A stretch of 64,000 bases of DNA from Heteronotia binoei. Its lineage: Eukaryota. The stretch spans positions 83,390,001 to 83,454,000 of the forward strand of contig NC_083230.1 in NCBI RefSeq assembly GCF_032191835.1, read 5' to 3'. This document shows, one piece after another, positions 386 through 46,984 of this stretch. The notes under the pieces are model-generated. The model was not told the DNA's origin. It saw nothing but the letters and a program-made list of their open reading frames with translations, and did no database searches. Position numbers and translations under genes: made by a program. The stretch's first letter is position 1. Every line of letters starts with the position of its first letter.

Positions 386-500
386 ATTTTATTATTTACT
401 CATTTACTTCATTTATTTAAATTAATTTACCTCATTTAATTATTTACTCATTTACTTCATTTATCTAAATAAATTTACTTCATTTATTATTTATTTAAAA
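386..500. repeat. AT-rich imperfect tandem repeat (TTTACTTCATTTA-like)
   Basis: Recurrent TTTACTCATTTACTTCATTTAT units. Confidence 0.6.
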
Positions 501-1630: not shown

Positions 1631-2779
1631 CTGAACACAAAGATAAATACCCTCTGAAAAGCATACTGCTTTGACAATGTGTGAGAACACTGACACTGTC
1701 TTTTCAGAGATGTCAGCCTCAAAATTTGCTTATATATATACATATTAACAATTATATCAAAAATATACATTTGGAAAGACTTCCACCAAAACAAAGTGCT
1801 GTCTGGACTACCAGGCAACAATCAACACTGCAACTACATTCAAAGGCCACAGTAATTAAAAGGCAATCACTCAAGAAAGAGCTCACAGCAATAAGCTGTG
1901 AAGGAGAATAAGAGATTTTTAAAAAATGTTCAATGAAATATATGTCTTTAAAGTAGACTGAAAAAACATACAATATCATAGAAACAAATGTGGCTGTTTT
2001 GCTATTGTTAAATGGGTACAATGCATATGAACTACTAATACTGCATGCTGCTCCAGCTTTTGTGTAAAACAGCTGCTCCATCATTTTGGTTGTGGATCCC
2101 ATTTACTCCAAACTGCATTAGTCACTAATCAGATTGATAAATACAAGTCTCAAAAAGGGCAATACATGAGACAAGCCAGAATGATTCCATCATCAACTTT
2201 CAAGGACACTTTTCTTTCACATCCCACCTGTTTGGAGTCTGTCATGTGATTTGCTGTCCACCCCTCCACCCCCAGCATTACAGGTGAACAGGAATTCAAG
2301 GGCTCAGGCACTGACACACATTCTTGAGTCCAAAAAGTGCTCCCCCCTTCTCAAAACAAAATAGTTCCATGGAACTGGGTGATTATCGCCGATTTCAGAA
2401 CATTTTAATTCCCCAGCACACAACTGCAGTATAACAATTAAAGACACTTTTAAAAATGTTGTTGAAAAAATGAAAGAAGTACTGGACACATCCGGCAGTC
2501 TTTGAGGGAACACTGGGTCGACACAACGCAAATTAAAAATATGCCACTTACATTTTTTCAATGCAGGCACACCCCTGCCACGTATACCACCACATCGTGG
2601 TACCCTTGGAACCACATCGACTTAAGGCTCCCCCCCCCCCACACACACGTCTGAATATGTACAAGGCTTGGAAGACAGCCGTCTTGTCACCTCTAAAGGC
2701 ATCGACAGAACGGAGTGTGCATGTGTGAACGGCTATCTAACCCGTGTCAGTGACGCTGCGCAGTGCAAAGGACAAGGAG

Positions 2780-3420
2780 GGTCACCCACTCCCATGGGAA
2801 GAATGAGATGTCGAAGACTTTTTTTTGGGGGGGGGGGGAGGAAAGACGGCTGACGAGGACTGGAGCCGGGTGGACTTTCCTCGGCCAGTCGCTGCCCGCC
2901 CCCCGGTGGCCTCAGCCGGGCCTACCTTGCTGGTGAGATCGAGCTCCGGCTCCCCATTGAGCACCTCGCCGTCCTCGCTGCAGTCCGAGTCTGGAATATC
3001 GCGGTGAGGCCGGGACGAAGCCGCCGCTGTCCCGCTGTGTGACGCGGGCTCTGGGGCAAACATCGAGGCCGGCACCGGCGAGCCCCCCATTGGGGAGCGA
3101 CTGCGCTCGGTCGCCATCTTGGCAGCCCCTGTCTCCGACTCCCGCCACATTAGCATAGGCCCCGCCCAGCCCAGCACAAGCCCGCAGAGACTTTTTGCGG
3201 CGTCCGCAAACCTACTTAATAATTCATTACCTTTCCCGCCAATCACCGTGCAGCCTCATTAATAATTACTATGGTCCTATGACAACCGAGATCTGATTAT
3301 TAATAGTCATAAATCATGCCTCTCTCACCCCCCCTCCCCTTTCCGTTTCCTCCAGACTGGAATGATAAATACTGAAGCGGCGGTGCAGCGCCACCCCTTT
3401 AATATAGCGCTGAAGCATGG
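2780..3420. promoter_or_regulatory. CpG island / GTPBP1 promoter
   Basis: Visibly CpG-rich. YY1-type AAGATGGCG overlaps the start codon on the minus strand; X-box-like GGTCCTATGACAAC at 3273-3286. Confidence 0.75.
2926..3117 (-). CDS. GTPBP1: GTP-binding protein 1, coding exon 1 (192 nt)
   Basis: Translates [24 protein letters not shown]...[22 protein letters not shown], matching the GTPBP1 N-terminus as I recall it. ATG at 3117-3115; donor AAG|gtagg at 2925; lies in a CpG island. Confidence 0.97.
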
Positions 3421-3832
3421 AACTAATCCTACGTGTTTAGCATGTCAAGACCAATGGGAGAGAAGAAGCTTGATAAACAAAGCTTGTGTCCAATCGAGCT
3501 AAAGATTTAAATAAGAGGTGGGAGCAGGATCGCGACAGAGGCGGCTTGGTTAGAAAAGAAGGCTGGAAATGTGGGGATTTCCTGTGTTTACTTTTGCCTC
3601 TTTGTGACAGAACTCTCCGGCTCCGGGATAGGACCTGGCAATTGCTGATGACAGAGGACCGAAATACATTCCTTTCATCCGTAATGAACTGATGCAAAGG
3701 AACTGACACTGTCTGAACGTGTCTGGACTAATCTCCAAACCTGCGAATTGTAAAGATTCACTCATTCAGGTGTTTTAATGTGAATTCATGGTTTCCAGGA
3801 AAACTGGCCCATTAAGTGTAACTATTCAACTA

Positions 3833-3990
3833 CAGAACAAAGTTGGAGTCCAGTGGCACCTTTAAGACCAACAAAGTTTTATTCAAGGTATAGTGCATGC
3901 ACGCTTCCTCAGACATTCTCAATAAAATTTTGTTGTCTTAGGTGCCACTGGACTCCAACTTTGTTCTACTGCTTCAGACCAGTATAGCTG
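3833..3990. mobile_element. Penelope-like terminal fragments in inverted arrangement
   Basis: GAACAAAGTTGGAGTCCAGTGGCACC...TTTTATT (3833-3892) is inverted against AATAAAA...GGTGCCACTGGACTCCAACTTTGTTC (about 3919-3966). Confidence 0.72.
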
Positions 3991-4085
3991 CCCACCTAGA
4001 TCTATGTTCTACCATAATAAAACTTGCTTATATCTCCCTGAAAAACACAGGGTCCAAGGGGGCAACTGGAATCTGGAGGCTATAT

Positions 4086-7355: not shown

Positions 7356-8149
7356 CTTTAGCCCCTTATCCAGATTACCATAAACCTGCTCAGTACAGAA
7401 AAGCAGATCCAGAATATGCTACTTATTATGCGTTGGGCCTATAATAACCATGGCAGTCATAAAGTCTTGAGCTTGACCTGATAAGGCTAGTTCAGTGTGG
7501 ATACTGAAGTCTGTTGGGACAATCAGCTCTGGGGAAAACAGACCAGCAAGATAAATGACAGCTATATGTTCTCAGGAAAACATACACATCTGTGTCAGCC
7601 TTTGCCATAAAAAGTTACAGGTTCACTGAGGCAAGGGAAAGTAAATTATATGTTAATTGAAAAGAACAGAGCTTGGAGTCAGAGATCTTGGGAATTACCA
7701 GAACCAGGATAGATGGGGCTTCATATCAACTCAAAGCCATAAAACTCACTGATACATAACCTTTGTGCTTGGCTGTGTTCTGCAGGCTCTGGAGGTCCAA
7801 CCCTCCAAGGTACAGATTGGTTACCTAACCATCTGCATAACCACCTTGAGAGCCACCATGGTTCAGTGGTTCTGTTGTTGGCCTTTGAGCTGGGAGATCC
7901 AGGTTTGAATCTCAACTTTGACAGATTAGTTTGTTGGGTGACCCTGGACCAATCACAGTCTCATTTGAAATAACGGAATTTCGTGCCCTAGCTTTCCTCC
8001 GAGAAGGCCTACACGTCTTTCCCTTTTTTATCCCTGCAAACAGCCCTTGCCACTGGCAAGTTACGAGAGCGCAACTTTCAAGAGCCATGCGAGAAGATTC
8101 AAACCGGCTTCTTAGCTGATCTCCAATATTTTAGTCCCTACAACTGTGC

Positions 8150-8760
8150 ACAGTCACTAGTAGTTCTTTAAGATCAGTTACGGCCCGACACTGCGCGACG
8201 TTGGCCAATGGAGATCACACCGGCTTAACTCCTTGCAACTGTCCCTAAAAGGGCCAGAGAAGCGCTTCGCTCGCACCTCAGAAAATCGATCTTAACCTGT
8301 TGTGACGTCACGCGGAGTCCCGCTCTCTCAACGTTAACAGGCGGGGCTAAGCGTGCGCGCGACGACCTGGGATGGGTAACTGCTGCGCATGTGCAGGCTA
8401 AGCGTCCAAGGTGGTCTGGGCCGCCAGCGGGTGAGTAGGGCCGGGGAGGGGACGACGTAGCGGGGAGGAGGCGCTTTTTTCTCCCACTTGAAAGGGGGTT
8501 CAGCCGTGGGGTTCCCTGGAGGGGTCTCCCGCCCTTCGCCTCTGAGGGCCTAGGTAGAGTTGACCCCGTGAGGGAGCCACTTACCTCACACGCCACCCTG
8601 AGCAGTCCCCCTCCCCCCGGATTATCTGAGTCACCCCAAGTTGGCAGCTGTTCGAGGGCCCCCCTCCGCAGACCTCAAGAAGGGGCTGCCATAAGCAGCA
8701 ACTTTCTCCCGTTACTAGTTGGGGGGAGGGGGCTGTTTACAAGGCCTCGCTTTCTGCCCA
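8150..8760. promoter_or_regulatory. CpG island / JOSD1 promoter with probable non-coding first exon
   Basis: CCAAT at about 8204, palindromic CRE TGACGTCA at 8303-8310, GC box at about 8340, NRF1-like TGCGCATGTGCA at about 8383, donor CGG|gtgagt at 8430/8431. Confidence 0.75.
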
Positions 8761-9713
8761 GTTGCGGCTTTACAGTACAGGCCAGAACTGCTGGGATTGC
8801 AAACGCAGAATCCCATCCCCCAGGCACCCTTTCCCTTCTAGCCGCACAGCGATGGTTGGGAATGGAGAACATCCTTAGCTCTTCAGTGCTTGGAATGGTT
8901 GCATTTGTGAGGCAAACAAAAGTCAGCCTCCTCACACGGGGAAAAGGAGGGGGTGTAGGCCTTGGAGCTTTGTTGTTGCTTTAGGTTATACAGCGTATCT
9001 GTAAAAAACAGGTTTGAGGTGCTTGTTTGTATTTTCGTACTCGGTATAGTGGAAGGGGGAAAAACATGCCTAATTGCATCTGTCTTTTCTCCATTAGGGA
9101 TTCAGAAGTATTAGCTAGGTGGAGCTGCTTCTTTCCCCTCCTACTTTGGAAGAGGCAGTTTTCTACCTCTTGGGATCATTATTTCTAGGACAGTCTCTCA
9201 AGAATTGGAAAACGCACTTGATGCATTGGTGGCATTACTATATTCCTTTTGAACACCAGCAGGCTGGCCTTGTTTAGTTTCATGAAGTTTGCCCTTTTGT
9301 TTTTGGGAAGTGAGCATTATTTACTAGGTAAGGCTGTGGATCTTTTGCTTAGTGGGCATCATTGACCAAAGGAAATGGAGGAAAAGGAGCGATGTGATAA
9401 ATTCCATCTGACAGTCTGATGTTATGGCCATGTAACTTATAAAATATTTTTCAAGAGGAAACAAAGAGAAAGGGGGGAATATATTAAAGACAGTCTCTTG
9501 GATGCTGAAGAAGAAAAATGGAAGAAAAATGACTCAGATCTTCAAAAGTTTCTTATGCAGCCATTCAATAAAGTCAACTGTTAAAGCAGCAACAGGTTTG
9601 CTGCTTGTGAACTGGAGTTGTCTGTAAAAGAAGTGGTTAGTTGCTTTTTGTGTGTGGGAAGAGGCTTTACACATTTTATCTCTTCCCATCTTCACCTTGT
9701 ACACTACGAAAAA

Positions 9714-9898
9714 ATGAGTTGTGTGCCATGGAAAGGTGACAAGACCAAATCAGAATCACCAGAAACACCACAGCTGATGCCAGTGCATATTTATCATGAA
9801 AAACAAAGAAGGGAGTTGTGTGCTCTACATGCCCTCAATAATGTCTTCCAGGACAGCAATGCCTTTACACGAGATACGCTACAGGAGATTTTCCAGAG
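9714..9898 (+). CDS. JOSD1: Josephin domain-containing deubiquitinase 1, coding exon 1 (185 nt)
   Basis: [15 protein letters not shown]...[21 protein letters not shown]...QEIFQR with the catalytic Cys motif; donor AG|gtaag. join(9714-9898,12004-12132,12229-12423,12862-12961) = 609 nt, 202 aa. Confidence 0.97.
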
Positions 9899-12003
9899 GT
9901 AAGTGGAACTTCTCTCTATTGGCAATATAATATTCTTTGTGTATGTGTTCACTGCTGGGGTTTTTTAAATTTCTGTACTTTGGAATTTGTGTACTCAGAG
10001 GCAGTTTGTAGAGTGAACGAGAGAAAGAAGAAAGGTACCCGGAATGTTACTGTTGATTGTTGAACTGATATCTTCTGCCAGCAGTTACCAAACATTTTTA
10101 TAGACAATATGACCCTGAACAAAGGTGTTTTGTCTTTGTGCAGGGTCATATTTTGGCCTTTGACTTAGAGCCACTTCACATAGGTCTTAAAACAATGCAT
10201 ATAAAAAACTGCACATAAATATGTACGCATAACAAAAGGGGAATAAAGTTTGGCTGATGTTCCCTGCTGTGTTGACAGAGTTAAACATATGTTTGCTGCC
10301 AGGTTTGGTGTGTGGCCATTAGTCCTTTAACCCAAACAGATCATTTCCATATTGCCTACAGTCTGCTCTTTGGAAATCATTGTCTTCTGCAAATGCTTTT
10401 ATTTTCCTAACCTTCAACTGCACAGGTGGCTTTACTGTCAAAATGCAGCAGTGCACCCTGCATTCCCTATTATTCTGTGACAGAAGGGTAGATAACATGC
10501 TCATGAAAATAGCATTGACACTTTATAAGTGGCCTGAGCCAGAGGAGGCTTGAACTAAAAAATAAAGCAGTAGTTGTGCTTAAATCTACACTAGAACTTG
10601 TAACTATTTATTTGCTTTTATGAACTGTATTGTTCATCCACTAGCAAGCTGAAATTCTTTCCTAGCATGTGTCATGTGTACCTGTTAGAGGAGTGCATCC
10701 CATAGATACAGAATGGTGCTAAAAACGCACAGTTTTTGTAACTTTATGATTCAGAGCTTTTATTGAAAATAAAGATGGGTAAAATAGTGAGTGTAATAGA
10801 TCCTGTGTTGTTTGTGCAGTATTTTCTTGCTCTTAGGGGAGTTCTCTGTATTTCTCACAACTCTCAGGAGCCTTAATTTAAAAGTCAGCACGTGGAACTT
10901 GATTCTCTTGTGCCCCATTCTGGACGTGCTCGAAGTGAAAAATCACATTTGCGGAAAGCATCTGAAACATTAGGAAACCTCTGTGTTTCTAGGTGTTTGA
11001 TTGATGGTTGTGAGGTTTATGTCCTTACACATTTAATAAATATAATTGCAATAATGTTATGTATGTAGTTTAGCCTATAAAAGTTGATTCCTACATAAAA
11101 GTGGCCCTATTCTGGCTTAATTCAGTTAATGTTTCTCTTTGCCTGTTTCTTTGCTTAACTTGTCATGGATCACAGACTTTTGTATTGCTACCAGACATTT
11201 GTGGAACAGGTCATAGCAAACCCCTTCTCCCCCATTTTAAAAAAATGGAACGATTAATACATAAATTGTGCCATCAAGTCACAGCCAACTTTTCTTGAAG
11301 TTCCGCCTTATGAGGTTTTCAAGGCAAGAGATAATAAGTGGTTTGCCATTGCTTTCTTCTGCATAGCAGCCCCAGTTTTCATTGGTGGTCTTTCAACAGA
11401 GTACTGACCCTGCTTCTGTGCTCTGGAGACTGAGCTAGTCTGGGCTATTAAATGTCATCTAGTAGTAGAGAGAAAGGATCTATTCATGTTAAATTTTTGA
11501 GGATGTAATTCCTAATACAGTCATTGAAGCATTGCATTTTACTGTTCTTGTGACTGAGGCCAAGATGACCACCTTGTCTTGCTTCAGATATTTTTGCATT
11601 GGGCCATTTTTAAATTCAGGATACCAGGTTCTCAAAACCATTTCTTTGAAATTACTGATACTGGATGAGGCTTCTATTAGATGCTGGTATCTGTTGTCAT
11701 TCAAGCAGTCTATAGCCTCATCTGACAAGGAAGTCTTACTTCTGGGTTCTGCAAACACTTTTTGAACTCCTCTCAGAAAGACCATATCTTCTGACTGAAA
11801 GAGTTGGTGTTGGTGAAAGTGGCATGCTTTTGAAATGTATGTTGAGAAGGGTGGAGAAGACAAATGTGCAGTGTCTTTCTGCTGCAGAGAAAAAAACCTG
11901 GTAACCACTCTCCTATTCCTAATATGACCTTCAATGATTCCTTTCACCTCCTTGGGAAAAAATATGATCACTGGCTCAATGTGCATGTCCTTGCTTTATT
12001 CAG

Positions 12004-12132
12004 GTTGTCTCCCAATACCATGGTGACCCCACACAAGAAGAGCATGCTGGGAAATGGGAACTATGATGTGAATGTCATCATGGCAGCTCTTCAAACCAAA
12101 GGCTATGAAGCAGTTTGGTGGGATAAACGTAG
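12004..12132 (+). CDS. JOSD1: JOSD1 coding exon 2 (129 nt)
   Basis: cag|GTTGTCT acceptor, AG|gtaag donor; [42 protein letters not shown]. Confidence 0.97.
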
Positions 12133-12228
12133 GTAAGGAGAACCAGAGTATCATGCGAGGCTCACTGTCAGGAGAAGATTCTGCTTTTCAGTTTGCTTTT
12201 ATAATTTTTCAATTTCTTTCTTTCTTAG

Positions 12229-12423
12229 GGATGTTAGTGTAATTGCGCTCTCTAATGTGATGGGCTTCATTATGAATTTGCCCTCCAGCCTCTGCTGGGG
12301 TCCACTGAAACTTCCCCTTAAACGGCAACATTGGATCTGTGTTCGGGAAGTGGGAGGTTCTTACTACAATCTTGACTCCAAACTCAAGGTGCCTGAATGG
12401 ATTGGTGGTGAAAGTGAGCTCAG
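12229..12423 (+). CDS. JOSD1: JOSD1 coding exon 3 (195 nt)
   Basis: tttcttag|GGAT acceptor, CAG|gtgag donor; [18 protein letters not shown]...[22 protein letters not shown] with the catalytic His and NLDS motifs. Confidence 0.97.
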
Positions 12424-12861
12424 GTGAGTTCTCTTCCATCTTAGCTTTCAGCTGGAAGTTCTGCCTTGCCACACAATGTAAGCTGGAGTATTTGGTGCAG
12501 TATGATTGGGGTTTTAACTTCTCTTGAGTAGTGGAGAGGTTGAAGTTGTGACAACAAAGTTTAAAAGAAAAAGCAACTATATGCATGTGTTAATCTGGAT
12601 CTTCTCCAAATTAGGAAAAGTTATCAGTAGGAGATAGGATCTGGAAGCAGGTATTTGTTATTCTGTATACCAAAGACTGTGTCCTTGGCCTGAGGAATGG
12701 ATATTCATTGTCCAGATAAACTATTGAGGTAGAGAGGTAGCAATTTGTCTGAGACCACAAAGTGAGTCTGTGGTAGAGAAGACTTGAGGTAATCACTTAG
12801 ATATGCTGGCCCAAAGAGTTCAGTGTCATTAACTGTCTTTTCCCTCTCTTCAATATCATAG

Positions 12862-12961
12862 GAAGTTTTTGAGACACCAGCTGCGAGGAAAGAACTGTGA
12901 ACTTCTCTTGGTAGTGCCTGAGGATGTAGAGGCACATCAGAGTTGGAGAGCTGATGCATGA
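12862..12961 (+). CDS. JOSD1: JOSD1 coding exon 4 (100 nt, stop)
   Basis: catag|GAAG acceptor; [32 protein letters not shown], then TGA at 12959-12961. Confidence 0.96.
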
Positions 12962-15060
12962 CCTGCAAACACCTTGTCCTTGCACTACAGTACTGGTCCT
13001 TTCCCCTCACCAACTTCTGTGTCCTGTGATGTGGATAATAAGTGCTCTAACTCCTCTTCCCTGGAATTTGGAAGGGTTTTTTTTGGGGGGAGGGAGGTTA
13101 TTTTATTTTAAGGGTGCAATAAAAGCAACCACAAGGTATTGTCAGGGCCAAAATGAAGAATAGAAACTGGACACTTACTAGGAAAAGGAAGAATCAGCTG
13201 TGTGCTCTATTTAAAATGCATTAATATGCTTTAGGAGTGAGGTATTGGAAGCCCCTTTTCCCTTCCCATCAATCTTAAAGGACTTTAGGCAGTTACACTA
13301 CTGCCCCCAGAAGTTTCCAAAGCTTCTTTTGACTGGAGAGCATGTCTTTCCTTTAGGGGGAAGGCTGGGGCCAAGCATGCTCCCTTCATATCCACACAAA
13401 ACTTTTTTGAAGAAACTTGCAAACCATTGGGGTCTCTCAGGAAACTCTAGATACTCTTAGCAACAGTAGGGTGCTTGCAGAGTCCTAATTGTGCCAAGAG
13501 TTGGGGGATGTATAGGAGGGGTAAATGGGACCATCACTATGGAACTCCTGTGGTTTTGCCTTCTATATAAATGTGTACTTTGTTGGTCTGAGCATAAGAG
13601 TAGCCTGGTTGGAAGATGTAAGCAATGGCTTATTAAAAGACCTCACAGGGTGTGGGGGAAGTGACTCAGCTGTGATTTAAATGCATGTTTTCCATTTATC
13701 CTGTTACCAGGGAGATACTCATTGAGCAGGGAGTAAAACTATTGGATGGAATCATGAAATAAAAGGGAAGGCTGACAAAATTTTAGCAACCTAAGAAAAT
13801 GCTGATGAAAGGGCAAGTTTTGTAGCAGCATAAGACAGTGTTGACGGAAGGGCAAGTTTTACTATTATTGCTAAGAGGAGAAATGTGAACTAGGATCAAA
13901 GGGCTAGATTTCTTTGGCTGGGATAGGTGTTTCAGCAAGTTAGCAGAGGGTAAGAGGAGATTGTTTACTGGAGGCACTGAGCCACTATCTTCCTTTGTGG
14001 TTGGCAGGTGAACAGTCCTCTGAATTAATCAGCTTTATGCTGTGCCACCCTCTCCTTCTTCCACCATACCCCAGCAGAAAATTGAATTACGGTTTTCCTT
14101 GTTAACCCCATGCAGGTGTTGTAATATTGTCACAATCAGTAGATGAAATGGATAATTTAGGATGGGCTTTTCATTATTGACCCTTCTTTGAGCCTAGGTT
14201 TCATTCTGTTGCATTTTTCATTACTACTGTTTTGTGCCAGCTTCACCTCCAATATTGGAACAGCAGAAACCAAACCCACATTTTCTGCATTTCATACAGG
14301 CAGGCTATTTACATTTGCTACTTGGGCTATTTGGGAGTCTTTGGCCTGCCTTTCCTGAATGTGAGCGTGATGTATACAGTCAGTTAATTCAGCATTCCAC
14401 TCTCCTTACAGTTTGCGGTGTCAAGATAGGAATATGATCTTATCTGTTGGCCTTCGGACAACCTGTAGACACTATACTGGAAACCTGAGTGGCTCTACAT
14501 GTACTACAGTTCAAGCCCAATACGTCTGTTTTCACAAAGCGCCCTCACCCCACCTCAGACTACACATTCCAATGACCCAAACCAGCTGGTAGAACTTGTA
14601 CACACCTACCCACACTTTTCACAAGCAGAACGTCAGGCTTGCAGATCTGCTTCTGACTAAGCCATTTTTTAGAAAAGCATATAAAAACTCAGCAGGAAGA
14701 CTATGCTCTGACTAAATAGCACTTTCGAGAGACCCTGTTTGCATGGAAGTCAATGGACCAGTGCACAATATGCAAATATCTTATAAAAAACTTAAGGCTG
14801 TTTCACTTCTCTGTATTAATGCCATTCTTCTGTTCCCAGGGAAAGTGGTGTGATTCAGCTGCTCAGGAAAAGGGAACATGTGATCTAACACACACACACA
14901 CCCTCTGGACAAGAGTTATGGTAACAGAGAAAAGGAACTAGCCTAGTCCCATTGCTTGGGAATGGAGAAGCCCATAATCGTTTTCTTGCTTGTTTGGTTT
15001 TGTTATAGCCTTGTCTTGGGTTTGTTTACAGAGATGTATTTTGTTTAACCAAATATTAAA

Positions 15061-15172
15061 AATAAAAAAACCTTTCTGAGTTACTTGTCACTTTCTGTTG
15101 TATTTAAGTGTCTTGTAATGATGCATGTAAAGGAAAAATAAATATTGATATGAAGTTGAAGCTTTAAATAAA
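15061..15172 (+). terminator. Cluster of AATAAA polyadenylation signals, probable JOSD1 3' end
   Basis: AATAAA at 15061, 15137 and 15167 in an AT-rich segment about 2.1 kb after the stop. Which signal is used is inferred, not shown. Confidence 0.6.
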
Positions 15173-15924
15173 AGTTTTCTTGCCACCCCCATTCTAGTTT
15201 AGGAAGGATACTAGTCTCTGCTAAAACACTCACACATAACACTGAGGTATAACATATATATTATCCAACCTAGAGAAGCAAACAATACATGAAATTTTAA
15301 AAAAGACTCCTGTGTGTGCACTGAAACTATTTAATACAAAAGTACAGTAGCTGACTTTGATACTAATAGATTCAGCAAAGAGACTTGGCAAAAATGACTT
15401 TTCCCACTTCCCCATATTTTTCACAGACAACATTTATAGGGCATGTAATTTTCTTCAAGTAGGAGCTCACTGCATAAACAGTCTAGTGTACATACAAGAT
15501 TTTTCCATTTGCTGTATGTGCTGGAATATTCACTCAGTTTCTTACTGTTGCTGCTCTGAAGTAGATCTTCAATACAGCAGGAGAGGAATACAAGAATATT
15601 TTACACTGACACTATTTCTGGCTGAAGTTAGCCAAAATGTGACATATCCTGAGGTGGCTTCCTGGATTTAACGATACCAGAACAAAAGCTGCTGAAGTCT
15701 TTGCAGTTGCTTACAACATGGATTAAGTGGATGGAAAAAGTCATGACTGCGTAAGGGGGAAGGCAGATAGCCCATTTTAGGAGAACCAGATAGGGATCCT
15801 GCCTCCACTGTGAAGAGGCTGATGTTCCAATGCTTATGGGAAAAATGCCCCAGCCTAACCAATCAAAAGTTCCAACAAATAATTTCAAGATTTTCTTTCA
15901 TGATATGGCTTCAATGTAATTCCT

Positions 15925-15999
15925 CTATATCTTTCCAGGAAGAGAAGGCAGGGCTCCTGGCATCCCTCCGGACAGCCCTGTGTTGGGTCCTAATAAAAT
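15925..15999 (-). CDS. TOMM22: TOMM22 exon 4 (75 nt, stop)
   Basis: ttacag|ATT acceptor; ILLGPNTGLSGGMPGALPSLPGKI, then TAG. Confidence 0.96.
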   Translation of the reverse strand: MLLGPNTGLSGGMPGALPSLPGKI

Positions 16000-16789
16000 C
16001 TGTAAGAAATCATGAGAAAACATGACTGAACATAAAAATAACATTCAAGCCTCTTTACAGCTTAACTGGGAAGGATTTTCCCCTCAGATTTGCACATCTC
16101 ATTTCGAAGAATGCAAGCCCAGCATTTGCTTACATTTGGTAATGTTCTTTTTGCCCAAACTGCCTTAGACTTAGAGCACAAGGTCAATATGAGAAGGTTG
16201 CTAGTTATTCAAGCAATGAAATGTTTCTTATTGTCCAACACGATACCTCACAGTCTATATAGCTCTTTGGTTTTTCCCTCCAGAAGGCAAGAGTGTTTTC
16301 AAATTGATACAGAAATATTAAGGCACCAACTGTGCAAGCTTAGGTTCCAATATTTTGATCTCTAGTAAGATAGCCAAGGATTGTACACATTTTGTCATGA
16401 ATGGTATTTATTGCTGAGCACCAACAAGGATGGCATAAGCAGCCATGAAAGCCAACCAAGGTCATAGTTAGATATGCCAATGACCAAAAGAGGGTGATGC
16501 CTCTTCTTTTAGGACGTCATTATAAGCTAGGAAGGCCTGCAGTCACTTGCATGCTTTGCTGTAATAATGGTTCCAGCCCTCAAGTGCCCTCATTCTGAAA
16601 TTGCTATATAAATTAACTGCACCTAAGCACATCCTATCAAGAAGAAATGGGTAAATGGAAGTTTCTATCACCAGGTGTTTGTTTAAAGGCTTCAGAAAGT
16701 TCATCTTACTTAAAGGAGAAAAGCTATTATGATAGGAAAGGATATAAATCTGTGCATGTGATGATAATGTGTGTCAACATCAAGAGAAA

Positions 16790-20644: not shown

Positions 20645-21345
20645 ATGCAGGACCTAGCAATGGTGATCCATGCGACGGTCACCTCAAGACTGGACTACTG
20701 TAACGCTCTCTACATGGGGCTGCCTCTCTACCGGACCCGGGAACTGCAGCTAGTGCAGAATGCGGCAGCCAGGCTGCTACTTGGTCTCCCAAGACGGGAG
20801 CATATACGGCCGGGGCTGCACGGACTGCACTGGCTGCCGATTGTATACCGGATCCAGTAGAAAGTGCTGGTCATAACCTTTAAAGCCCTATATGGCCAAG
20901 GACCGACCTACCTGAGGGACCGTCTCTCCCCATATGAGCCCCAGAGAGCACTGAGGTCAGTAGGCAAAAACAGACTGAATATCCCTGGGCCAAAGGAAGT
21001 TAAACTTCAAAGCACCCGCACCCGGGCCTTTTCAGCCGCGGCCCCACAACTCTGGAACCAGCTCCCAGAGGAGGTGCGGGCCCTGCGGAGCTTAGACCAG
21101 TTCCGCAGGGCCTGCAAGACCGCCCTTTTCAAACAGGCGTTCACCAATGACTGAGCTAATGTTTACTGCTAAATTAATAATGTTTACCACCAATGTTAGT
21201 TTCAGGAATGTTTTGATTACTGATTGATTGGTTTTAATGTGAACTTAATGTTTTATTATTGTACTGTTTCACTTTTAAATGTTGTTAGCCGCCCTGAGCC
21301 TGCTCCGGCGGGGGAGGGCGGGATATAAATAAAATTTTACATTAC
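20645..21345 (+). mobile_element. 5'-truncated L2-clade LINE (ORF2 C-terminus and 3'UTR)
   Basis: RLDYCNALY...LQLVQNAAARLL...LHWLPI...RAFSAAAPQLWNQLP, typical of L2/CR1-group ORF2; tail GCCGCCCTGAG...GGGCGGGATATAAAT. Confidence 0.88.
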
Positions 21346-38022: not shown

Positions 38023-40049
38023 GTGAGTGAAGAGATCTTACATCCCTGTTATGCAAAGAATCCCAAAATTCAAGAAGTGTTTTCAATTATGCTAGATTTC
38101 ATCAATACATGATTTGGCAAAGTATCCTACTTAGCCTTTTTGATAAAAAGATGAAATCACCTTGGGTTCTTTTCTTTTTAGTGAAGGGGATGCCCTGTAA
38201 CATATTTTATTGTTCCAAGGTGTAAACCAGGTGCAATGATCTTACTTATTACTGAATCAATTTTAATGAAAAATCCACTCTATGTTTTCCTTGCAACTTT
38301 GTCTTTGCTGCAGTGTGTTTGAATGGAGTAGAGATAGTTTCACTTTCAACATTCCTATTTAGACAGCTGAAACTCATGCTTCCTGAAGTTGTGTCCTTGC
38401 AAATAAAGTGCTGATACTTTGGGCCAGCTTGTCTCTGCTGAATGGATTTGACCTAATGAGTGCTCTAACCTAGGAACCCACAGCCAACGGTGGAATATTA
38501 CACAGGAGAGCCATTGCCAATCTGAGTAGACCTGAGGGGTGGGGGGGAGAGCTTGCAAAGCCGTTTCATTGTTTTCCCAGGCTCAGAGCATTTTATATTT
38601 TTAGTTTCGGCTGTGATCCTTGTTTTATTTTAAAACTTGCATTGCCAAATCCCAGTAGTCCCCCACTTTTCATGTTTTCCCAGGCTAAGATAATTTTTAG
38701 TTTCTGCTGTGATCCTTGTGCTTTTTCTTGATGTTATATTTTTAAAATTGCATTGCTAAATCCCACTGCTCCCTCGCCTTTCCATTTTAAACAAAATACT
38801 GCAAGAGTTTTAAGCATGCTTGTATTTTAAGTTACAAAAAATATATTTAATTGTGTTTGTCTGTGTCCTTTATAAAGTTTATATCTCTGCTACCTCACAT
38901 TACATTTTATGATACACTTGACTCAGGCCCCCAAAGTCCCATTTGTGTCAGAACTGGCCCCCCTAAGCTTCCCCAAAGCAACAAGCAAATAAAAGCGTAC
39001 AGGAGTTGGAGACAAAGGCATGATCCCACCAGAGTTAAGATATTTTGTGCCTCATTGATTTTCATGGGCTGGGCTTTTTTTGTAGAAAAAGCCCAGCAGG
39101 AACTCATTTGGGAAAGATTTTAGCTTGTGTCAGTGGAACTGAAAAGTCTGGATTGACTCGTGCCCGTTATAACGAAAGATTTTAGCATCTGAATTTATTT
39201 AAAATATTTATATCTTGCTTTTTCCAGCTGGATGAGATGGCCAGGATAGTTCACAGCCCACCACTAAAACAAGAAAAATAGCAGAAAAGTGCAGCAATAA
39301 TTGCAGAAAAAAAACAGGCCAAATCAGTTTTGGCATCAGCAATATAAAATTAATCATACATTAAAAAGCCATCAGCCAGGAGTAATTGGCAGTTCTCCAT
39401 AAAAAAACCCTAATTCCTTTGTTTCCGACTGAAAAAAGTTGAAAAAATATTTTCAACAGCCATTACAAGCTTTACAGAGAGAAAGTGTTGCAAACTGTCT
39501 TTGAGAGTGCCTTCTATAAGAGAGGAGCTAGAATGCCCTCTCTCTTATGGCCACCCACTGGTACTTCTGAAAAGGAAGGCTTCACAGATGGCCTCAGTGT
39601 TTGGATAGGTCTGTTTGGGAGAAGATGATCCTGTAAAAATGCTGGTCCTAAATCATGGCTTAGAGCTGTGAAGGTTACAATACCAGCAGTCTGAACTGAG
39701 ACCCAAAATAAACAGGCAACCAGTACAAATAGAACAGAATAGAACATATACTTTATTGGCTTGTCCTTATTACCAGCCCGGCAGCAGCCTTCTCAGAACA
39801 AGAACAAAATCTGTGGTGTAGTGTAGTGGTTAATCTGTGGTGTAGTGGTTAAGTGTGCGGTCTCTTATCTGGGAGAACCGGGATTGATTCCCCACTCCTT
39901 CACTTGCAGCTGCTGTAATGGCCTTGGATCAGCCATAGCTCTGGCAGAGTTGTCCTTGAAAGGGCAGCTGCTGTGAGAGCCCTCTCCAGCCCCACCCACC
40001 TCACAGGGTGCTTGTTGTGGTGGGGGGGGGGAAGGTAAAGGAGATTGTG

Positions 40050-43000
40050 TTTCAAACAATTTTATTAGTAACATATAGTAATATATTCAATTTCTTACAT
40101 CATTAATAACTACTTTTTCCTCTATCCCATATATTACTTTCTAACCTCCCCTCCCCCCGTTACGTGACCCCCACCGGTGTACTAGACTTAAAATGTTAGT
40201 ATTAAAGGTACCCTTAATCAATAAGAACCAAAATTCATATCCTCCTCCCTCTTATACTTAGTCATTATCAAAAATTATCCAATGTCCTTTTATTTTCCAC
40301 TCTTTTTCTACGTATCTTCTGAACTTTTTCCACTCCATCTTAAATACTTCTAAATCATAGTCTTGTAAGGTTCTTGTTAACTTGTCCATTTCACTCCATG
40401 CCATAACTTTTACAATCCAATCCCATTTCTCTGGTATTCTTTCTTGCTTCCACAACTGCGCATACATACAGCTGAGAGCAAGTACCAGATTAAAGTCCTA
40501 TCTTCTTTTGGAAATTTTTCCATTTGTGATCCTAACAGAAAAGTCTCTGCAACTTTGTTAAATTCATATCCCAAGATCATAGAAATCTCTTGTTGAATCA
40601 TCTGCCAATACTTTTTCGCTCTTTCACAAGTCCACCACATATGGTAGAAAGAACCTTCATGTTTTTTACATTTCCAACACCAGTCCGGCATCTTATTATT
40701 CATCTTTGCCAACTTTTTAGGAGTCATATACCATCTATACATCATTTTAAAACAATTTTCTTTGATACTCTGACATGTTGAGAGTTTCATAGAGTTCTTC
40801 CACAAATATTCCCATGTATCCATCTGTATTTCTTTATTTACATTAATTGCCCACTTAATCATTTGGGATTTCACTACTTCATCTTCCGTAGACCATTTTA
40901 AAAGTAACTTATAAATTTTCGAAATTAATTTTTCATTATCTCCAAGCAGAACTTTTTTCATTTCCGTTTGTTCTCGTCTTATTCCTTCGGTTTTAAGATC
41001 ACTTTCCACCAAACTCTTTATTTGTTGCATTTGAAACCAATCATACTTATAATTCAGCTCCTCAGCAGTTTTCAACTCTATTTTACCGCTATTTTACCGC
41101 TTGACCAGTTCCGCAGGGCCTGCAAGACCGTCCTTTTTAAACAAGCGTACATCGACTGCTGAATTGCTGTGAATAAAGGATCCGCCATCTGCATTACTAT
41201 GGGACTATTTAAACTGGCAGAACCAGCGTCAGAATTTCACTATTGCTGCCAGATAAATTTAATTTAACTTAAATAATGTATTTTAAATCTATTAACTGGT
41301 TTTTATATGTTTAATCTTTTAATTGTTAAATTTAAAGTTTTTATCTATTAATGTAAATGTATAAAATGTTGTTAGCCGCCCTGAGCTGCCTAGGCGGGGA
41401 GGGCGGGATACAAATAAAATCTATTATTATTATATTATTATTTGTATTTTTAATAGTTGATTATATGACATCCATTTTCCCTCTCCTAACTCAGCCGTTT
41501 TTTTTATTACTTCTGCAGGCACTATCCATAGTGGTTTTCTCTCATCGCCATATTTCTTATACTTCATCCAGATATTTAGCAAGTTATTTCTTATGTAATG
41601 GTGAGAGAAATAACCATCCATCTTTTTCTTCCCATAGTACATATAAGCGTGCCAGCCGAATTTATTTCCATGACCTTCCAATGTTAAAAGTTTTTTATTC
41701 AATAACATCACCCAATCTTTTATCCACACCAAACAAACTGCTTCATGATATAGTCTTAAATCTGGTAATTGAAATCCTCCTCTTTCTTTAGCATCTGTTA
41801 AAACTTTCATTTTAATCCTTGGTTTCTTTCCAGCTCATATAAATTCTGAAATCTTCCTTTGCCATTTATTAAATTGTTTGCTGTCTTTCACAATCAGGAT
41901 AGTTTGGAATAAATACATTATTCTTGGCAAAATGTTCATCTTAATTGCAGCTATTCTCCCAAGCAATGACAAATTAAGCTTATTCCACTTTATCATATCT
42001 TCATCCATTTTACGCCATAACTTTTCATAATTTTTAAACAAATCAATGTTCTTCATTGTTATTTCCACACCCAAATATTTTTCTTTAGAGGTAACCTCAC
42101 ATCCCGTTAGCCTCTGCAGTTCCTTTTGTTTATTTACTTGCATATTTTTACATAAAAGTTTTGATTTTTCTTTATTAACATAAAGTCCCGCCAATTCTCC
42201 AAAATTTTGTATTTTAGCTAACAACAAAGGTGTTACTTGTATAGGATTTTCATTTATAAACATTATGTCATCTGCAAATGCTCTATATTTCCGGGATCAG
42301 AAAATGGCGAGCTGAGCTGCTTTCCTCAACGGGGGCAGGCTGGCACTTCTATTTGGGGTAGTAAAAGGCAAACTAATGCTTTCTGCCTACTTTTCTCAGC
42401 TAGAGAATTGTCCAAGATATGCACAGATACTTTGAGGAGACTTACCTTGGCTGAAAGAGTGTCCTGGAGGGGGCTCCTTTGAGGCTTTGAGGGATCTCCG
42501 GAGAGAAGTCGTATATTCATCATCTACAGAAGTTTCCAGAGTCATTTATTTGATATAAGCTCGACAGGATGCGAGTCTTCTTTTACAACTTTAAACATCT
42601 AATCTACAAAAAACTGGTGTCGATTTGGATAAACTACAAAAAAAGTTATTGATCGCTATCTTTTCACTCCAAGAGTAACTAAAGCTAAACAAAACAAAAT
42701 TAAAAGGTGGGAGTTGGATATAATGGAAGCCTGAAAGGAGAAGAAAAGGGGCTAAATTTGAACTTTGTAAATCTAAAAGACAGCGCTAAAAGGAGAAAGG
42801 AATTTATTGTTTAGTCTATCTGTGGTTGAGGAAGTAGCCCAACTAGTCACTTACCTGACGTTCTAGCATCCACTTCGGCTTCTGACTTTGGCTTCTGGAC
42901 CCCCTGACTTTGGCTTTGACTTCTGGACCCCCCCGACTTCGGCTCCTGGACCTTTGACTTGCGATACCTGGACTGTGATTCGGTTTTGGCGTATTGGACC

Positions 43001-46000
43001 CTCGTTACTCCCCAGCTACAGACCTTGGACTGCCCCTGGACTTCGCCTGACCCAGCCCCAGCACGTGACACATTGCGAGATTTCTCTACCAGTGAAACGA
43101 GACTTGGTGGCAGGAAAAGTAGGAAGTACTAGAGGAAGAAGAAGGAAGTAAGAGAAGTAAACAGCCTACTCCAGGATTATAATATCAGTGAGAAATATCG
43201 GTGGCCATTGCTGGGAGGACAAAGTTTTAACAAAGTTTTTAAAGACTTGGACAATAAAAATTGGTGGAGTTAAATGAGTTGGTAATTTTAAAATAAGGAC
43301 TATTGGACAGTGGTGAAGAAGATCTGAATTGGATAAAGGGAAAAGAAGGAAAAATTTTTAAAGTGAAGCAAAAGTTGTGATCGCCATTTTGGGGAAAATA
43401 AAAAAACTTTAAACATTAATATCTGAGCCTGGGTGGCACAGAGGATGGTGAAATTGGGTTCATTGGAAAGGGCAAGCTTCACTTTATTAAACCTGATGGT
43501 CCAAATTTAATTTGATGAGATAAAATTTTTTGACCTTTTTTACATGTCAGACCCGAAGCAAATTCGTACTAGTTCTGCTTCAATGGAGAAAATGCAAGCC
43601 CAATTAGATGCAGTGGAAGCCATGGATTATGAAGGGGGTGAAAGAAATGATAACTGCCTCTAAAAAAGATATAAGAAAGTACATTGAGGACTAAAAAAAA
43701 GAATTAAAAAAAGAGATAGAGAATCTCAGAAATGAAACTGTAGTAATAACAAAAAAAAGTACAAGAGGTGGAAGAGAGAGTGAAAACACATGATTCCACC
43801 TTGTTAAAATTACAAGAAAAGGTGTTAATACATGACTGCAAGTTGATGGAGACACAGATTCGTCTGAGAGGTGTACCAGAAGATGAAGAATCTGATTTGA
43901 AAGAACACATAATAAAAATAAGTGCAGAATTTTTGAAGGAAGATCCCGAAGGGAACAGAAGTATGTATGATTATATGTATAGAGTGAACTCACTCTATGC
44001 AAAAAAGAACAATCTGCCAAGAGATGTGGTTATAAGATTTATGACAAAAGAAATGGTGGGAAAAATCATGAATAAAATTTTTGAAAAGACATTGATAGTG
44101 GGAGGTAGCAGAATAAAAATTATGAAAGAGTTGCCAAGACAAGTGTTAACTGACAGGAATGCATATACAAAATTGACAGAAAAACTACGTGACAATGGAA
44201 TGAGATACAGATGGATAATACCTGAAGGTTTGAGCTTTGAACTTTGAGGGGAAAGGATTGCAATTACAAACACACAGGAACTGCGTAGATTTTACGGAGA
44301 AAATAAAGAATTTGCACCATGCTGGATTACAAATTGATATCTTGGATGTAAATGGACTAAATACACCACAAAAAAGGGCAACATTTCATTGGATAAAAAA
44401 AAAATTGTAATATAGTTTGTTTACAAGAAGTGCATATTAGACAAAAGGATTATAAATTTTTATGGAGCAAGCAATTGGGACTAGAATTTTATACATTGGC
44501 TGAACAGAAGAAGAGAGGAGTAATTTTTATATTAAAAAAGAGTTAGACCCGAAATTGGTTTTTAAGATAAAGATGGAAGATATATAACAGTGGAAATTTT
44601 ATTGAATGCTAAAAAGACTTTATTGTTGGGACTTTATGCTCCAAATGGTGCAAAGGACATTTTCTTTAAAAATATTACGCAACATCTTGATGAAGTGACT
44701 TATGAGCAAATTTTGTTGATGGGGGACTTTAATGGAACAATTCAGAACACAATAGATAGATCTGGGAAGACAAAAATTGATAAAGAAGGGAAATTGCCAA
44801 AATCTTTTTTTGAGTTGGTTAAACAAGAGAATTTGGAGGATATATGGAGGAAGTTTAACCCTGAAGTACGGGACTACACCTTTTTCTCAGCCAGACATAA
44901 TTCCTTTTCTAGAATTGACATGTTGTGGGGTACTAAAGATTTTGGATAACAAGGAAGGTAGAGATTTTACCCAAAATAGGAGCTGACCACAACCCAATAA
45001 TGTGGATTACAAAATTGTCCAAAAAGGTGAGAAGATGGAGAATGAAGATTAACTACAAAATAAAGAAATTGTGATATCTTTAGAAAATGAAACTAAAGCC
45101 TATTTCCAAGTTAATGTAAGAGAAGATATAGAATTTCAGATGGTATGGGATGCCTATAAGGCAGTAATGAGAGGAATACTAATAACACTGAATAATAAAG
45201 ACAAGAGAGCAAAAGATAAACAGATCTTGGACATTCAAAATGAAATTAAGAAAAAAGAAGGTGAATTAAGAAAAAGGCCTGGGAAAAAGAAAATTATAAG
45301 GGAGATTACAATATTGCAAACACAAATGAGACATTTGTTAAATAAGGAAATGGAATGGAATTTGAAAAAATTACAACAGAAATCTTTTGAGGGTGCAAAC
45401 AAACCTGGAAAGTACTTGGCTTGGCAATTGAAGAAAAAGAGAGAAAGTAAAATTATTAACAAAATTGTGGTTGATGGGAAAGAGATGGTGGACCAAGAAG
45501 GAATAAAGAGAGAATTTTTTAAGTATTATGCTAATTTATTTAAGGGTGTTAAAGTAAAGAAAGAAAGGATCAAAACGTATTTGCAAAAGATCAAAATAGC
45601 ACCCTTAACTGAATATATGGAAAAAATTTTGAATGATCCAATTGAAAAAATAGAAATTGAAGCAGCGATTAATGTAATGAAAATTGGGAAGGCACCTGGA
45701 CCAGATGAATATATGGCAAAAAAATTTAAAATGCTTAAAGAACAATTAGTACCGAAACTTCAAAAATTGATGAATGGAATAAGATTAAATGGGAAAATAC
45801 CCAACACATGGAGAAAGAAGCTGTAATCTCGTTGATTCCAAAGGAAGATAGAGATGTCACGAATGTAAAGAATTATAGACCAATTTCATTATTAAATAAT
45901 GATTATAAGATATACACAAGAATCCTGGCAGAGCGGCTTAAACAATATTTAATAAATTTTATAAAGGAAGATCAAGCGGGCTTTCTCCCCAAAAGGCAAA

Positions 46001-46373
46001 TAAGAGACAATATTACAACTGTTGTAAATATTGTAGAATATTATGAAAGACATCCAGAGAAGGAAGTTGCGTTATTTTTTGTGAATGCAGAGAAAGCTTT
46101 TGATAATTTGAACTGAGACTTTGTTTGCAGTTATGGAAAAAATAAAGTTTGGGGAAAACTTTGTAAGAATGATAAAGGCAATATATACTGAACAACGTGC
46201 CAGGTTATGTATAAATGCAGATCTCACAGATGAAATGAAAATTAGCAAAGGCACAAGACAAGGTTGTCCGCTTTCGCCATTGTTGTTTATAATGACTCTT
46301 GAAATTTTATTGATGTAGATACAAGAAGATGAAGAGATAGAAGGAATGAGAATTAAAGGATTTACCTATAAAT
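40050..46373 (-). mobile_element. Full-length L1 LINE with inverted 5' portion, pseudogenised
   Basis: 42291-46373 (+) carries 5'UTR, ORF1 (from about 43544), endonuclease (from about 44319) and RT up to ...GFTYK. 42290-40050 (-) continues KYRAFADD..., then the Cys-rich CWKC..HMWWTC domain and a 3'UTR with AATAAA. Flanked by TSD GTAAAGGAGATTGTG (40035-40049, 46378-46392). Confidence 0.93.
41091..41445 (+). mobile_element. 5'-truncated L2 LINE 3' end nested in the L1 ORF2
   Basis: GACCAGTTCCGCAGGGCCTGCAAGACC...GTTAGCCGCCCTGAG...GGGCGGGATA with a (TAT)n tail, the same end as the 20645-21345 copy. L1 ORF2 resumes on both sides. Confidence 0.85.
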
Positions 46374-46984
46374 GAAAGTAAAGGAGATTGTGAGTCGCTC
46401 TGAGACTCTTCAGAGTGGAGGGCGGGATATAAATCCAATATCTTCTCTTCTTCTATTAGTACAAATCAACACAAACTGTTATGCAAGCTTTTGAGCTCAC
46501 CAGAACTCTTCCTCAGGCTGGATGCTAGAAAATGTAAAAAAAAAAAGATTGAAGCAGATTCTTCAAGCCATATGGTTAAAGGTCTGATCTTGCATTTATC
46601 CAGCAAAGGTCCAGCATCAACCCCCAGATCAGTCATATATCTGTCCAAGAATGCCTCCATGGCTGAATGAAATTTGTTTGTCCCCCCGTCCATGCAATCA
46701 CTGATTTCTGATATGCCTTCACAGTTTCCAGAGATTCCCCAGTGTTAGATAGAAATGAGAGAGACAGTAAAGTATCGTGTATATTGATGACAAGAAGTCC
46801 AAATCACTGGTTAACTTCCCCTACCAATTTAATGTAGATGTTAAACAGTAAAAGAACAAGGTAAACACCAAGTCAGTGGCAGAGCAGTAGCCCCTCCCCA
46901 CATTGTTCAGATTTTTATTCTGCCCTCTGCACAAGCAGGCCCAGGGTGGATCACAACATGGGAACAGAGTCAGTTACCCATTAC

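What the first reader, a model, noticed from the sequence alone, without database searches (positions are those of the whole stretch)
40035..46392. Full-length L1 whose entire ~4.1 kb 5' part is inverted inside one TSD pair (twin-priming geometry) in a squamate
Seen: ORF2 breaks just before the RT FADD motif. The plus-strand segment ends ...GGA TTT ACC TAT AAA T (46373) and the minus-strand segment starts AAA TAT AGA GCA TTT GCA GAT GAC (42290), with only AAAT duplicated. The plus-strand segment begins at what looks like the element's 5' end (CCGGGATCAGAAAATGGCG, YY1-like, 42291). The 6.3 kb unit lies between two copies of GTAAAGGAGATTGTG (19 bp with one mismatch if extended), and the host SINE resumes in register. 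Known: this layout is the twin-priming product described for mammalian L1, where the inverted piece is usually 5'-truncated. Inference: the inversion arose during insertion and captured essentially the whole 5' end. To my knowledge such cases are poorly documented outside mammals. The 5'UTR promoter now points along FAM227A sense inside an intron. The TSD does not start with the A-run typical of TT/AAAA targets, and I see no clear primer microhomology.
Basis: partly seen in the sequence, partly recalled or inferred. Interest (0 to 1): 0.75.

Follow-up and report, generated by a model that had tools for sequence, protein, structure and literature searches.

The report
Twin-primed, half-inverted lizard L1 insertion
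A dead 6-kb L1 jumping gene sits here with its front two-thirds flipped relative to its back third inside one pair of target-site repeats; this is the known "twin priming" copying accident of mammalian L1, cleanly shown in a reptile-type genome, with no sign of any function.

Summary
Between two copies of a 19-bp target-site duplication (40031-40049 and 46374-46392, 18/19 identical) lies one decayed L1.

- **3' part:** 1.9 kb on the minus strand (42290 down to 40050), interrupted by a later 351-bp SINE-like insertion.
- **5' part:** 4.1 kb on the plus strand (42291-46373), holding the 5'UTR, ORF1, the endonuclease and the reverse transcriptase (RT) up to just before FADD.
- **Host SINE:** it is continuous once the insert and one duplication copy are removed.
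- **Junction:** about 500 whole-genome reads from collinear copies of this high-copy family join 46373 to 42286 on opposite strands, with 4 shared letters. The two halves are therefore adjacent in the normal element. Nothing is missing and only AAAT is duplicated.
- **Alternatives:** no inverted repeats bracket the flipped block, so later recombination or an assembler flip has no substrate.

Twin priming at insertion is the best explanation (about 0.9). That the inverted cDNA reached the true 5' end is likely (about 0.7), from a YY1-type box at +11 to +19 and a length of about 5.97 kb, but no other copy confirmed it.

Locus-specific reads across 42290/42291 were not obtained. There is no poly(A) tail, no TTTT/A target and no primer microhomology.

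The mechanism is known, so this is a new example rather than a new kind. The scan had already noted a twin-primed non-L1 LINE in this genome (s1-340698).

The parts
39808..40030 (+). Left part of the host SINE that received the insertion
   Evidence: Aligns to other SINE copies in the window.
40031..40049 (.). Left copy of the 19-bp target-site duplication (GAAGGTAAAGGAGATTGTG)
   Evidence: Family D6. Present once in intact SINE copies.
40050..40261 (-). L1 3'UTR and 3' end. AATAAA lies 11 nt before the last base. The element ends ...TTGTTTGAAA with no poly(A) tract.
   Evidence: Read from sequence. ORF2 frame ends near 40261.
40262..41089 (-). ORF2 C-terminal part including the Cys-rich motif, with one frameshift near 40450-40500
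   Evidence: Matches human ORF2p residues 1007-1158, E 1e-8. Frames.
41090..41440 (+). Later nested insertion: a 5'-truncated SINE-like repeat with an (ATT)n tail. It is not part of the L1.
   Evidence: Family reads skip 351-356 bp here (table 5). Homologous copies lie at 21090-21335 and 53755-53521.
41441..42290 (-). ORF2 from KYRAFADD (RT active-site motif) through palm/thumb. This is the start of the non-inverted cDNA piece.
   Evidence: RVT_1 positions 148-205. Human ORF2p 696-841, E 2e-18.
42287..42290 (-). First copy of the duplicated AAAT (L1 sense), at the end of cDNA 1
   Evidence: Collinear-copy joints with 4 shared letters (table 5).
42291..43544 (+). L1 5'UTR (1.25 kb), starting at the inversion junction. 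It has a YY1-type core AAAATGGCG at 42301-42309 and short tandem repeats at 42872-42955.
   Evidence: Read depth of hundreds shows it belongs to the repeated family (table 2).
43545..44250 (+). ORF1 (L1 ORF1p-type RRM and C-terminal domain), broken by at least 2 frameshifts and stops
   Evidence: Human L1 ORF1p 2yko residues 50-185, E 6e-4. Frames.
44320..46373 (+). ORF2 N-terminal 55%: APE-type endonuclease, linker, and RT up to 4 residues before FADD. About 6 frame changes and several stops.
   Evidence: Human ORF2p 92-211, E 6e-19. RVT_1 positions 1-138. Human ORF2p 616-675.
46370..46373 (+). Second copy of the duplicated AAAT, at the start of the inverted cDNA 2 and directly against the TSD
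   Evidence: table 5. Sequence.
46374..46392 (.). Right copy of the target-site duplication (GAAAGTAAAGGAGATTGTG; one mismatch at 46377)
   Evidence: family D6. SINE-family reads begin to fit at 46374 (table 7).
46393..46460 (+). Right part of the host SINE, resuming in register

Best explanation
One L1 RNA was copied into this site in a single retrotransposition event by twin priming.

1. First nick (inferred). The window's plus strand was cut after ...GATTGTG (40049).
2. cDNA 1 (inferred). That 3' end primed reverse transcription at the RNA's 3' terminus. The product is 40050 up to 42290 on the plus strand, antisense to L1.
3. Second nick (inferred). The minus strand was cut 19 bp away. This freed a 3' overhang ending ...TTTAC(C/T)TTC.
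4. cDNA 2 (inferred). Before cDNA 1 was finished, the overhang primed a second reverse transcription on the same RNA. It started inside the RT coding region, 4 codons before FADD. It ran to, or very near, the RNA's 5' end. The product is 46373 down to 42291 on the minus strand.
5. Overlap (inferred). cDNA 1 stopped 4 nt past the place where cDNA 2 had started, which gave the AAAT overlap.
6. Joining (inferred). Host repair joined the two cDNA ends without microhomology at 42290|42291 and filled the gaps. This produced the 19-bp TSD.

Shown: the geometry, the TSD, the in-register host SINE, the exact adjacency of the halves in normal family copies, and the complete L1 domain set.

The insert is an inert fossil. 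It carries many frameshifts and stops, and a SINE-like element inserted into it later.
For: - TSD of 19 nt, 18/19 identical, exactly at both ends.
- Host SINE continuous across the rebuilt empty site.
- RT domain split between RVT_1 positions 138 and 148, with both halves meeting at human ORF2p residue ~696.
- About 509 reads and one contig from collinear family copies join the halves on opposite strands with a 4-letter overlap.
- Every L1 module is present once, in the expected order: ORF1p, EN, RT and the Cys-rich domain.
- No inverted repeat longer than 26 nt in the region, and none at the block's borders.
- AATAAA lies 11 nt before the 3' end.
- The TSD length falls in the 10-20 bp range reported for 5'-inverted human L1 inserts (PMC4245944).
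- The 4-nt cDNA overlap falls within the human range, median 12 and quartiles 4-17 (PMC12016303).
- Anolis L1s that pass 1 kb usually go to full length (PMC5389967). This makes a 4.1-kb second cDNA plausible.
Against: - No poly(A) tail. At most 3 A's precede the TSD.
- Neither nick site resembles TTTT/A.
- There is 0 nt of complementarity between the overhang's 3' end and the L1 RNA at the internal start.
- The join at 42290|42291 also has no microhomology.
- I could not isolate reads of this locus across 42290|42291 or 46373|46374, so the assembly itself is the only witness of the inverted order.
- The family's true 5' end was not fixed from other copies.
Confidence: 0.88

Rival explanations
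1. An ordinary collinear full-length L1 inserted here, and the 4.1-kb 5' block was inverted later by two breaks and end joining.
For: It gives the same final topology. A staggered break could also leave a 4-nt duplication. The element is old: reads are mostly 90-95% alike to it, and it carries a nested insertion.
Against: One breakpoint would have to fall exactly on the L1 5'-end/TSD boundary, with no base lost or gained. That is roughly a 1-in-1000 coincidence. No inverted repeats are present to drive it. Twin priming needs no coincidence and is frequent for L1 (about 20% of human inserts, PMC12016303).
Confidence: 0.05
2. Assembly artefact: the locus is really collinear, and the assembler flipped the block within a high-copy repeat.
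For: The family has on the order of 1000 copies at 85% or more. I have no locus-specific read across the junctions.
Against: A flip would need wrong joins at exactly the L1 5' end and at one RT codon. It would also need an invented 4-nt duplication. No inverted repeats bracket the block. The window has no gaps. The copy is 5-10% diverged from its relatives, so long reads place it uniquely.
Confidence: 0.04
3. Two independent events: a 5'-truncated L1 and a separate L1 fragment that landed head to head, or recombination between two copies.
For: Nested and adjacent repeats are common here.
Against: The plus-strand piece has no 3' end of its own. The two pieces meet at the same RT codon with a 4-nt overlap. 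A single TSD pair encloses both.
Confidence: 0.01

Closest known systems
5'-inverted L1 insertions of human and mouse, made by twin priming (Ostertag & Kazazian 2001, cited from memory and from reference lists; PMC12016303, PMC12350158, PMC2912911)
   Same: One TSD pair, a non-inverted 3' piece, and an inverted 5' piece whose internal end abuts the other TSD. A small overlap at the inversion point, a TSD of 10-20 bp, and an inversion point within the 3' 2 kb of the element.
   Different: The host is a reptile-type genome. The inverted piece is 4.1 kb and apparently reaches the 5' end, whereas human inverted pieces are usually truncated. There is no poly(A) tail, no TTTT/A target, and no microhomology at either the internal priming site or the cDNA-cDNA join.
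Anolis carolinensis L1 families with long 5'UTRs (L1AC1-15; PMC5389967)
   Same: Length of about 6 kb, a 5'UTR of 0.8-1.5 kb, and two ORFs. They tend to be either very short or full length.
   Different: Read depth suggests on the order of 1000 copies of this family, against tens to hundreds per Anolis family.
Retrotransposition assays of Yamaguchi et al. 2014 (PMC4245944)
   Same: Inverted inserts go with long (10-20 bp) TSDs, as here (19 bp).
   Different: That study saw 5' inversion only for human L1 in human cells, and none for L1 in chicken DT40 cells. Here an endogenous L1 of a sauropsid shows it in the germ line.
Twin-primed non-L1 LINE noted earlier in this genome (s1-340698)
   Same: Same genome and the same geometry: one TSD with the front part flipped.
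   Different: A different LINE clade and a 2.5-kb inverted part. I did not re-examine it.

Membership tests
L1 clade non-LTR retrotransposon | ORF2 with N-terminal APE-type endonuclease | tested here: met
   44566-44946 matches human L1 EN/ORF2p residues 92-211, E 6e-19.
L1 clade non-LTR retrotransposon | Reverse transcriptase domain with FADD, best matched by L1 ORF2p | tested here: met
   RVT_1 matched in three pieces. The top PDB hits are human ORF2p, ahead of R2.
L1 clade non-LTR retrotransposon | C-terminal Cys-rich segment of ORF2p | tested here: met
   40413-41093 matches human ORF2p 1007-1158, E 1e-8, and includes the Cys/His motif.
L1 clade non-LTR retrotransposon | ORF1p of the L1 type (RRM plus CTD) | tested here: met
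   Human ORF1p 2yko residues 50-185, E 6e-4. Pfam gave no hit at E 0.01, so the match is weak.
L1 clade non-LTR retrotransposon | Placement within the L1 clade by RT phylogeny | not tested
   No tree was built. The closest database fragments are about 50% identical Logan ORFs with no names.
L1 clade non-LTR retrotransposon | Poly(A) or A-rich 3' tail | tested here: not met
   The element ends ...TTGTTTGAAA directly against the TSD. The tails of other family copies were not examined.
Twin-priming (5'-inverted) insertion | A single TSD pair encloses both pieces | tested here: met
   19 nt, 18/19 identical, at 40031-40049 and 46374-46392. The host SINE is in register.
Twin-priming (5'-inverted) insertion | The 3' piece keeps the element's 3' end next to one TSD, and the internal end of the inverted piece is next to the other TSD | tested here: met
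Twin-priming (5'-inverted) insertion | The pieces are consecutive on the element, with only a small deletion or duplication at the inversion point | tested here: met
   Opposite-strand joints of collinear copies with 4 shared letters.
Twin-priming (5'-inverted) insertion | Microhomology between the target overhang and the RNA at the internal priming site (frequent, not obligatory) | tested here: not met
   By eye, there is 0 nt at the overhang's 3' end. A 7-nt identity (TAAAGGA) lies 14-20 nt upstream and is probably chance.
Twin-priming (5'-inverted) insertion | L1 endonuclease target of the TTTT/A type at the first nick | tested here: not met
   The first nick lies in ...GATTGTG/AGTCGC and the second in ...TACCTTC/CCCCC. 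The preference of squamate L1 EN is unknown to me.
Twin-priming (5'-inverted) insertion | Inverted order present from the time of insertion (empty site or inverted ortholog, never a collinear one) | not testable with these tools
   There are no related genomes in reach.

The most novel reading that the evidence does not exclude
Twin priming is an intrinsic property of L1-clade target-primed reverse transcription that also operates in sauropsid germ lines. This runs against what the chicken DT40 assays suggested. In squamates, L1 reverse transcription tends to run to completion. Twin priming there may therefore regularly yield 'complete but inverted' copies. This high-copy family would then allow a genome-wide measurement of how the inversion rate, TSD length and cDNA overlap depend on host and element.
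Probability: 0.4. Interest if true: 0.45.

Novelty: new member of a known kind. Interest (0 to 1): 0.3.

Why it matters
It is a clean, internally controlled example that the two-primer accident known from mammalian L1 also happens to an endogenous L1 in a reptile-type genome. It shows a long TSD and a few-base cDNA overlap, as in humans. It lacks the poly(A)/T-rich target pairing and the microhomologies usually invoked.

That bears on whether 5' inversion depends on host factors (PMC4245944). It also bears on how the second primer engages the RNA.

On its own it is one fossil locus with no functional consequence. Its value lies in prompting a genome-wide census in this high-copy family.

Tried and rejected
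1. Other copies inside the window. None of this L1 family were found. Only the nested SINE-like repeat has relatives.

2. Protein word searches to fetch other copies. The ORF1 piece gave nothing. The ORF2 linker piece gave five unnamed Logan fragments at only 46-56% identity, which are useless for the family's 5' end.

3. Exact-ORF look-ups of three ORFs next to the junctions, made to find an independent assembly of this locus. None is on record.

4. A metagenome scan for the 22-mer at the 5' end. It gave one hit, L001, with no other similarity to the window. I take it as a chance match.

5. Locus-specific junction support and loose ends at 42291 from short reads. The read-laying output is dominated by SINE and family reads, and the relevant rows were cut. 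The left TSD junction was outside the 6000 letters I could lay.

6. Pfam on the ORF1, EN and C-terminal pieces was blank at E 0.01. PDB sequence searches identified them instead.

7. I considered reading GAAA at 46374-46377 as a copy of the L1's terminal GAAA, made by the second primer before it jumped to the internal site. I kept the simpler reading, a TSD extension with one mismatch, because that tetramer is a common variant of the host SINE at exactly this position (table 7). The alternative is not excluded.

8. The frameshift density looks higher in the 5' part (8 in 2.75 kb) than in the 3' part (1 in 1.68 kb). By a simple binomial count this is p about 0.09, so it is not evidence for different ages.

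9. The FAM227A context was not tested.

10. I built no family consensus.
Full report
**What is there**

The stretch 40031-46392 consists of four units:
- a 19-nt repeat;
- 2241 bases whose minus strand reads as the back of an L1;
- 4083 bases whose plus strand reads as the front of an L1;
- the 19-nt repeat again.

The repeat finder lists the pair as family D6: 40031-40049 and 46374-46392, 95% identical, with the last 15 nt exact.

**The L1 modules**

| Strand | Coordinates | Module | Best match |
|---|---|---|---|
| + | 43750-44244 | ORF1p RRM/CTD | human ORF1p, E 6e-4 |
| + | 44566-44946 | endonuclease | human ORF2p 92-211, E 6e-19 |
| + | 45739-46315 | RT, N-terminal part | RVT_1 positions 1-138; human ORF2p 616-675 |
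| - | 42296-41838 | RT from KYRAFADD | RVT_1 positions 148-205; human ORF2p 696-841 |
| - | 41093-40413 | Cys-rich C-terminal region | human ORF2p 1007-1158, E 1e-8 |

- Extending the plus piece to 46373 brings it to about human residue 696.
- Each module is therefore present once, in L1 order, and the break falls four codons before FADD.
- The copy is dead. ORF1 has at least two frame changes. The ORF2 front has about six frame changes plus stops. The back has one frame change and one stop.

**The halves are neighbours in normal copies**

- I laid about 1x of whole-genome short reads from three runs of one sample, plus the contigs of a fourth run. All carry the same coded species label. They were laid on 40600-46599 at 85% likeness.
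- Depth is 200-4000 over the L1. The family therefore has on the order of a thousand copies, and most reads are 90-95% alike to this copy.
- Two equivalent opposite-strand joints are listed: 42286<->46373 and 42290<->46369. Each has 4 letters that fit either side. They are supported by 290, 120 and 99 reads and one contig.
- These are reads from collinear relatives. In them the sequence runs straight from 46373 into 42286, with AAAT present once.
- So in this copy nothing is missing and AAAT is present twice.
- The same reads match both halves, so the two halves belong to one family, at least around the junction.

**The target**

- Left flank plus one 19-mer plus right flank aligns without a gap across the join to other copies of the host SINE. 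An example is 51723-51454, 88% over 279 nt.
- Tens of thousands of SINE-family reads begin to fit at exactly 46374 (table 7).
- This places the L1/target boundary at 46373|46374. It also shows that GAAA(G) is SINE sequence, so the TSD is 19 bp with one later substitution (40034 G, 46377 A).

**The nested insertion**

- Family reads skip 351-356 bases between 41084-41089 and 41441.
- The inserted 41090-41440 is a 5'-truncated copy of a repeat also found at 21090-21335 and 53755-53521.
- It entered after the L1 did.

**Mechanism**

The layout is the twin-priming product.

1. The plus strand was nicked after 40049. Its 3' end primed cDNA 1 from the RNA's 3' terminus up to 42290.
2. The minus strand was nicked 19 bp away. 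Its overhang primed cDNA 2 inside the RT region. cDNA 2 runs from 46373 down to 42291.
3. cDNA 1 overran the start of cDNA 2 by four bases.
4. Repair joined 42290 to 42291.

The order of nicks, the use of one RNA molecule and the repair route are inferences. The geometry is shown.

A single RNA is the economical reading. With two RNAs there would be no reason for cDNA 1 to stop where cDNA 2 began.

**Rivals**

- **Later inversion or assembler flip.** Either would need a breakpoint exactly on the L1 5'-end/TSD boundary. No inverted repeat brackets the block; the longest in the region is 26 nt at 77%, and it lies elsewhere.
- **Independent insertions.** These are excluded by the single TSD and the exact abutment.
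- **Remaining weakness.** I could not show reads of this very locus across the junctions.

**Is the inverted piece complete?**

- Removing the nested insert and one AAAT leaves 5969 bases, with a 1254-base 5'UTR.
- Anolis L1 families with long 5'UTRs are over 6 kb with 0.8-1.5 kb UTRs (PMC5389967).
- The exact 9-mer AAAATGGCG contains the YY1 core GCCAT on the other strand. It sits at +11 to +19 from 42291.
- That 9-mer occurs only twice in the 64-kb window on both strands, and both hits lie in this 5'UTR.
- In human L1, a YY1 site at the very 5' end sets the transcription start (PMC11602158).
- This makes 42291 a credible RNA 5' end. No second copy could be fetched to prove it.

**What does not fit the textbook**

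- There is no poly(A). The element ends ...TTGTTTGAAA, 11 nt after AATAAA.
- Neither nick is in a TTTT/A-like site.
- There is no complementarity between the overhang's 3' end and the RNA at the internal start.
- There is none at the cDNA-cDNA join either.
- These do not argue for a rival. They say that priming here did not rely on base pairing.

**Comparison with the literature**

- About 18-22% of human L1 insertions carry a 5' inversion, and overlaps of 4-17 nt between the two cDNAs are usual (PMC12016303). More than 1000 such events were seen in 1019 human genomes (PMC12350158).
- Inverted inserts in cell culture have TSDs of 10-20 bp. They were seen only for human L1 in human cells, not in chicken DT40 cells (PMC4245944).
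- In the held library, no paper that mentions twin priming together with lizard, snake or non-mammalian describes such an insertion. Ostertag & Kazazian 2001 is not held and is cited from memory.
- The scan itself had already noted a twin-primed non-L1 LINE in this genome.

**Verdict**

'Full-length' is probable. It is a known kind of event in a less-studied host, and a single inert locus. Interest is modest.

**Limits and compliance**

- I built no family consensus and mended no frame.
- The organism label is coded, so 'gecko' and the FAM227A context were not checked.

Noticed in passing
window 41078-41440: The nested SINE-like insertion is preceded by an exact 11-bp tandem duplication (CTATTTTACCG, 2.2 copies). 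It has no matching repeat after its (ATT)n tail, so the duplicated target lies on one side only instead of flanking the insert.
   Followed up: partly
window 46374-46445 (host SINE 3' part): Thousands of reads per run 'go back' from 46445 to 46374 or 46380, with 32-38 fixed letters in between. A very abundant SINE subfamily therefore carries a tandem duplication of this roughly 100-bp 3' module. Depth on the SINE is 8000-16000 at about 1x coverage.
   Followed up: no
window 42872-43017: The L1 5'UTR holds short tandem units of 13-29 nt. In run X3, 240 reads skip 100 bases (42916 to 43017), so family copies differ in repeat number there. This is reminiscent of monomer-type L1 promoters.
   Followed up: no
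window 43382-43390 (minus strand): A second exact AAAATGGCG (YY1-type core) lies in the same 5'UTR on the opposite strand, about 1.1 kb from the 5' end. These are the only two exact hits in 64 kb.
   Followed up: no
window 40600-46373: Read depth suggests on the order of 1000 copies of this L1 family at 85% identity or more, with the 5'UTR nearly as deep as the ORFs. That is much more than the tens to hundreds of copies per L1 family reported for Anolis (PMC5389967).
   Followed up: partly
window 46353-46359 versus 46379-46385: The 7-mer TAAAGGA is shared by the L1, 14-20 nt before the internal priming point, and by the TSD. It is too far from the overhang's 3' end to have primed, and is probably chance (about 4% by a rough count).
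   Followed up: partly
L001 2131-2152 (contig CEUN01022497.1): An exact 22-mer match to the L1 5' end in a public metagenome contig, with no other similarity to the window. I take it as a chance hit.
   Followed up: yes
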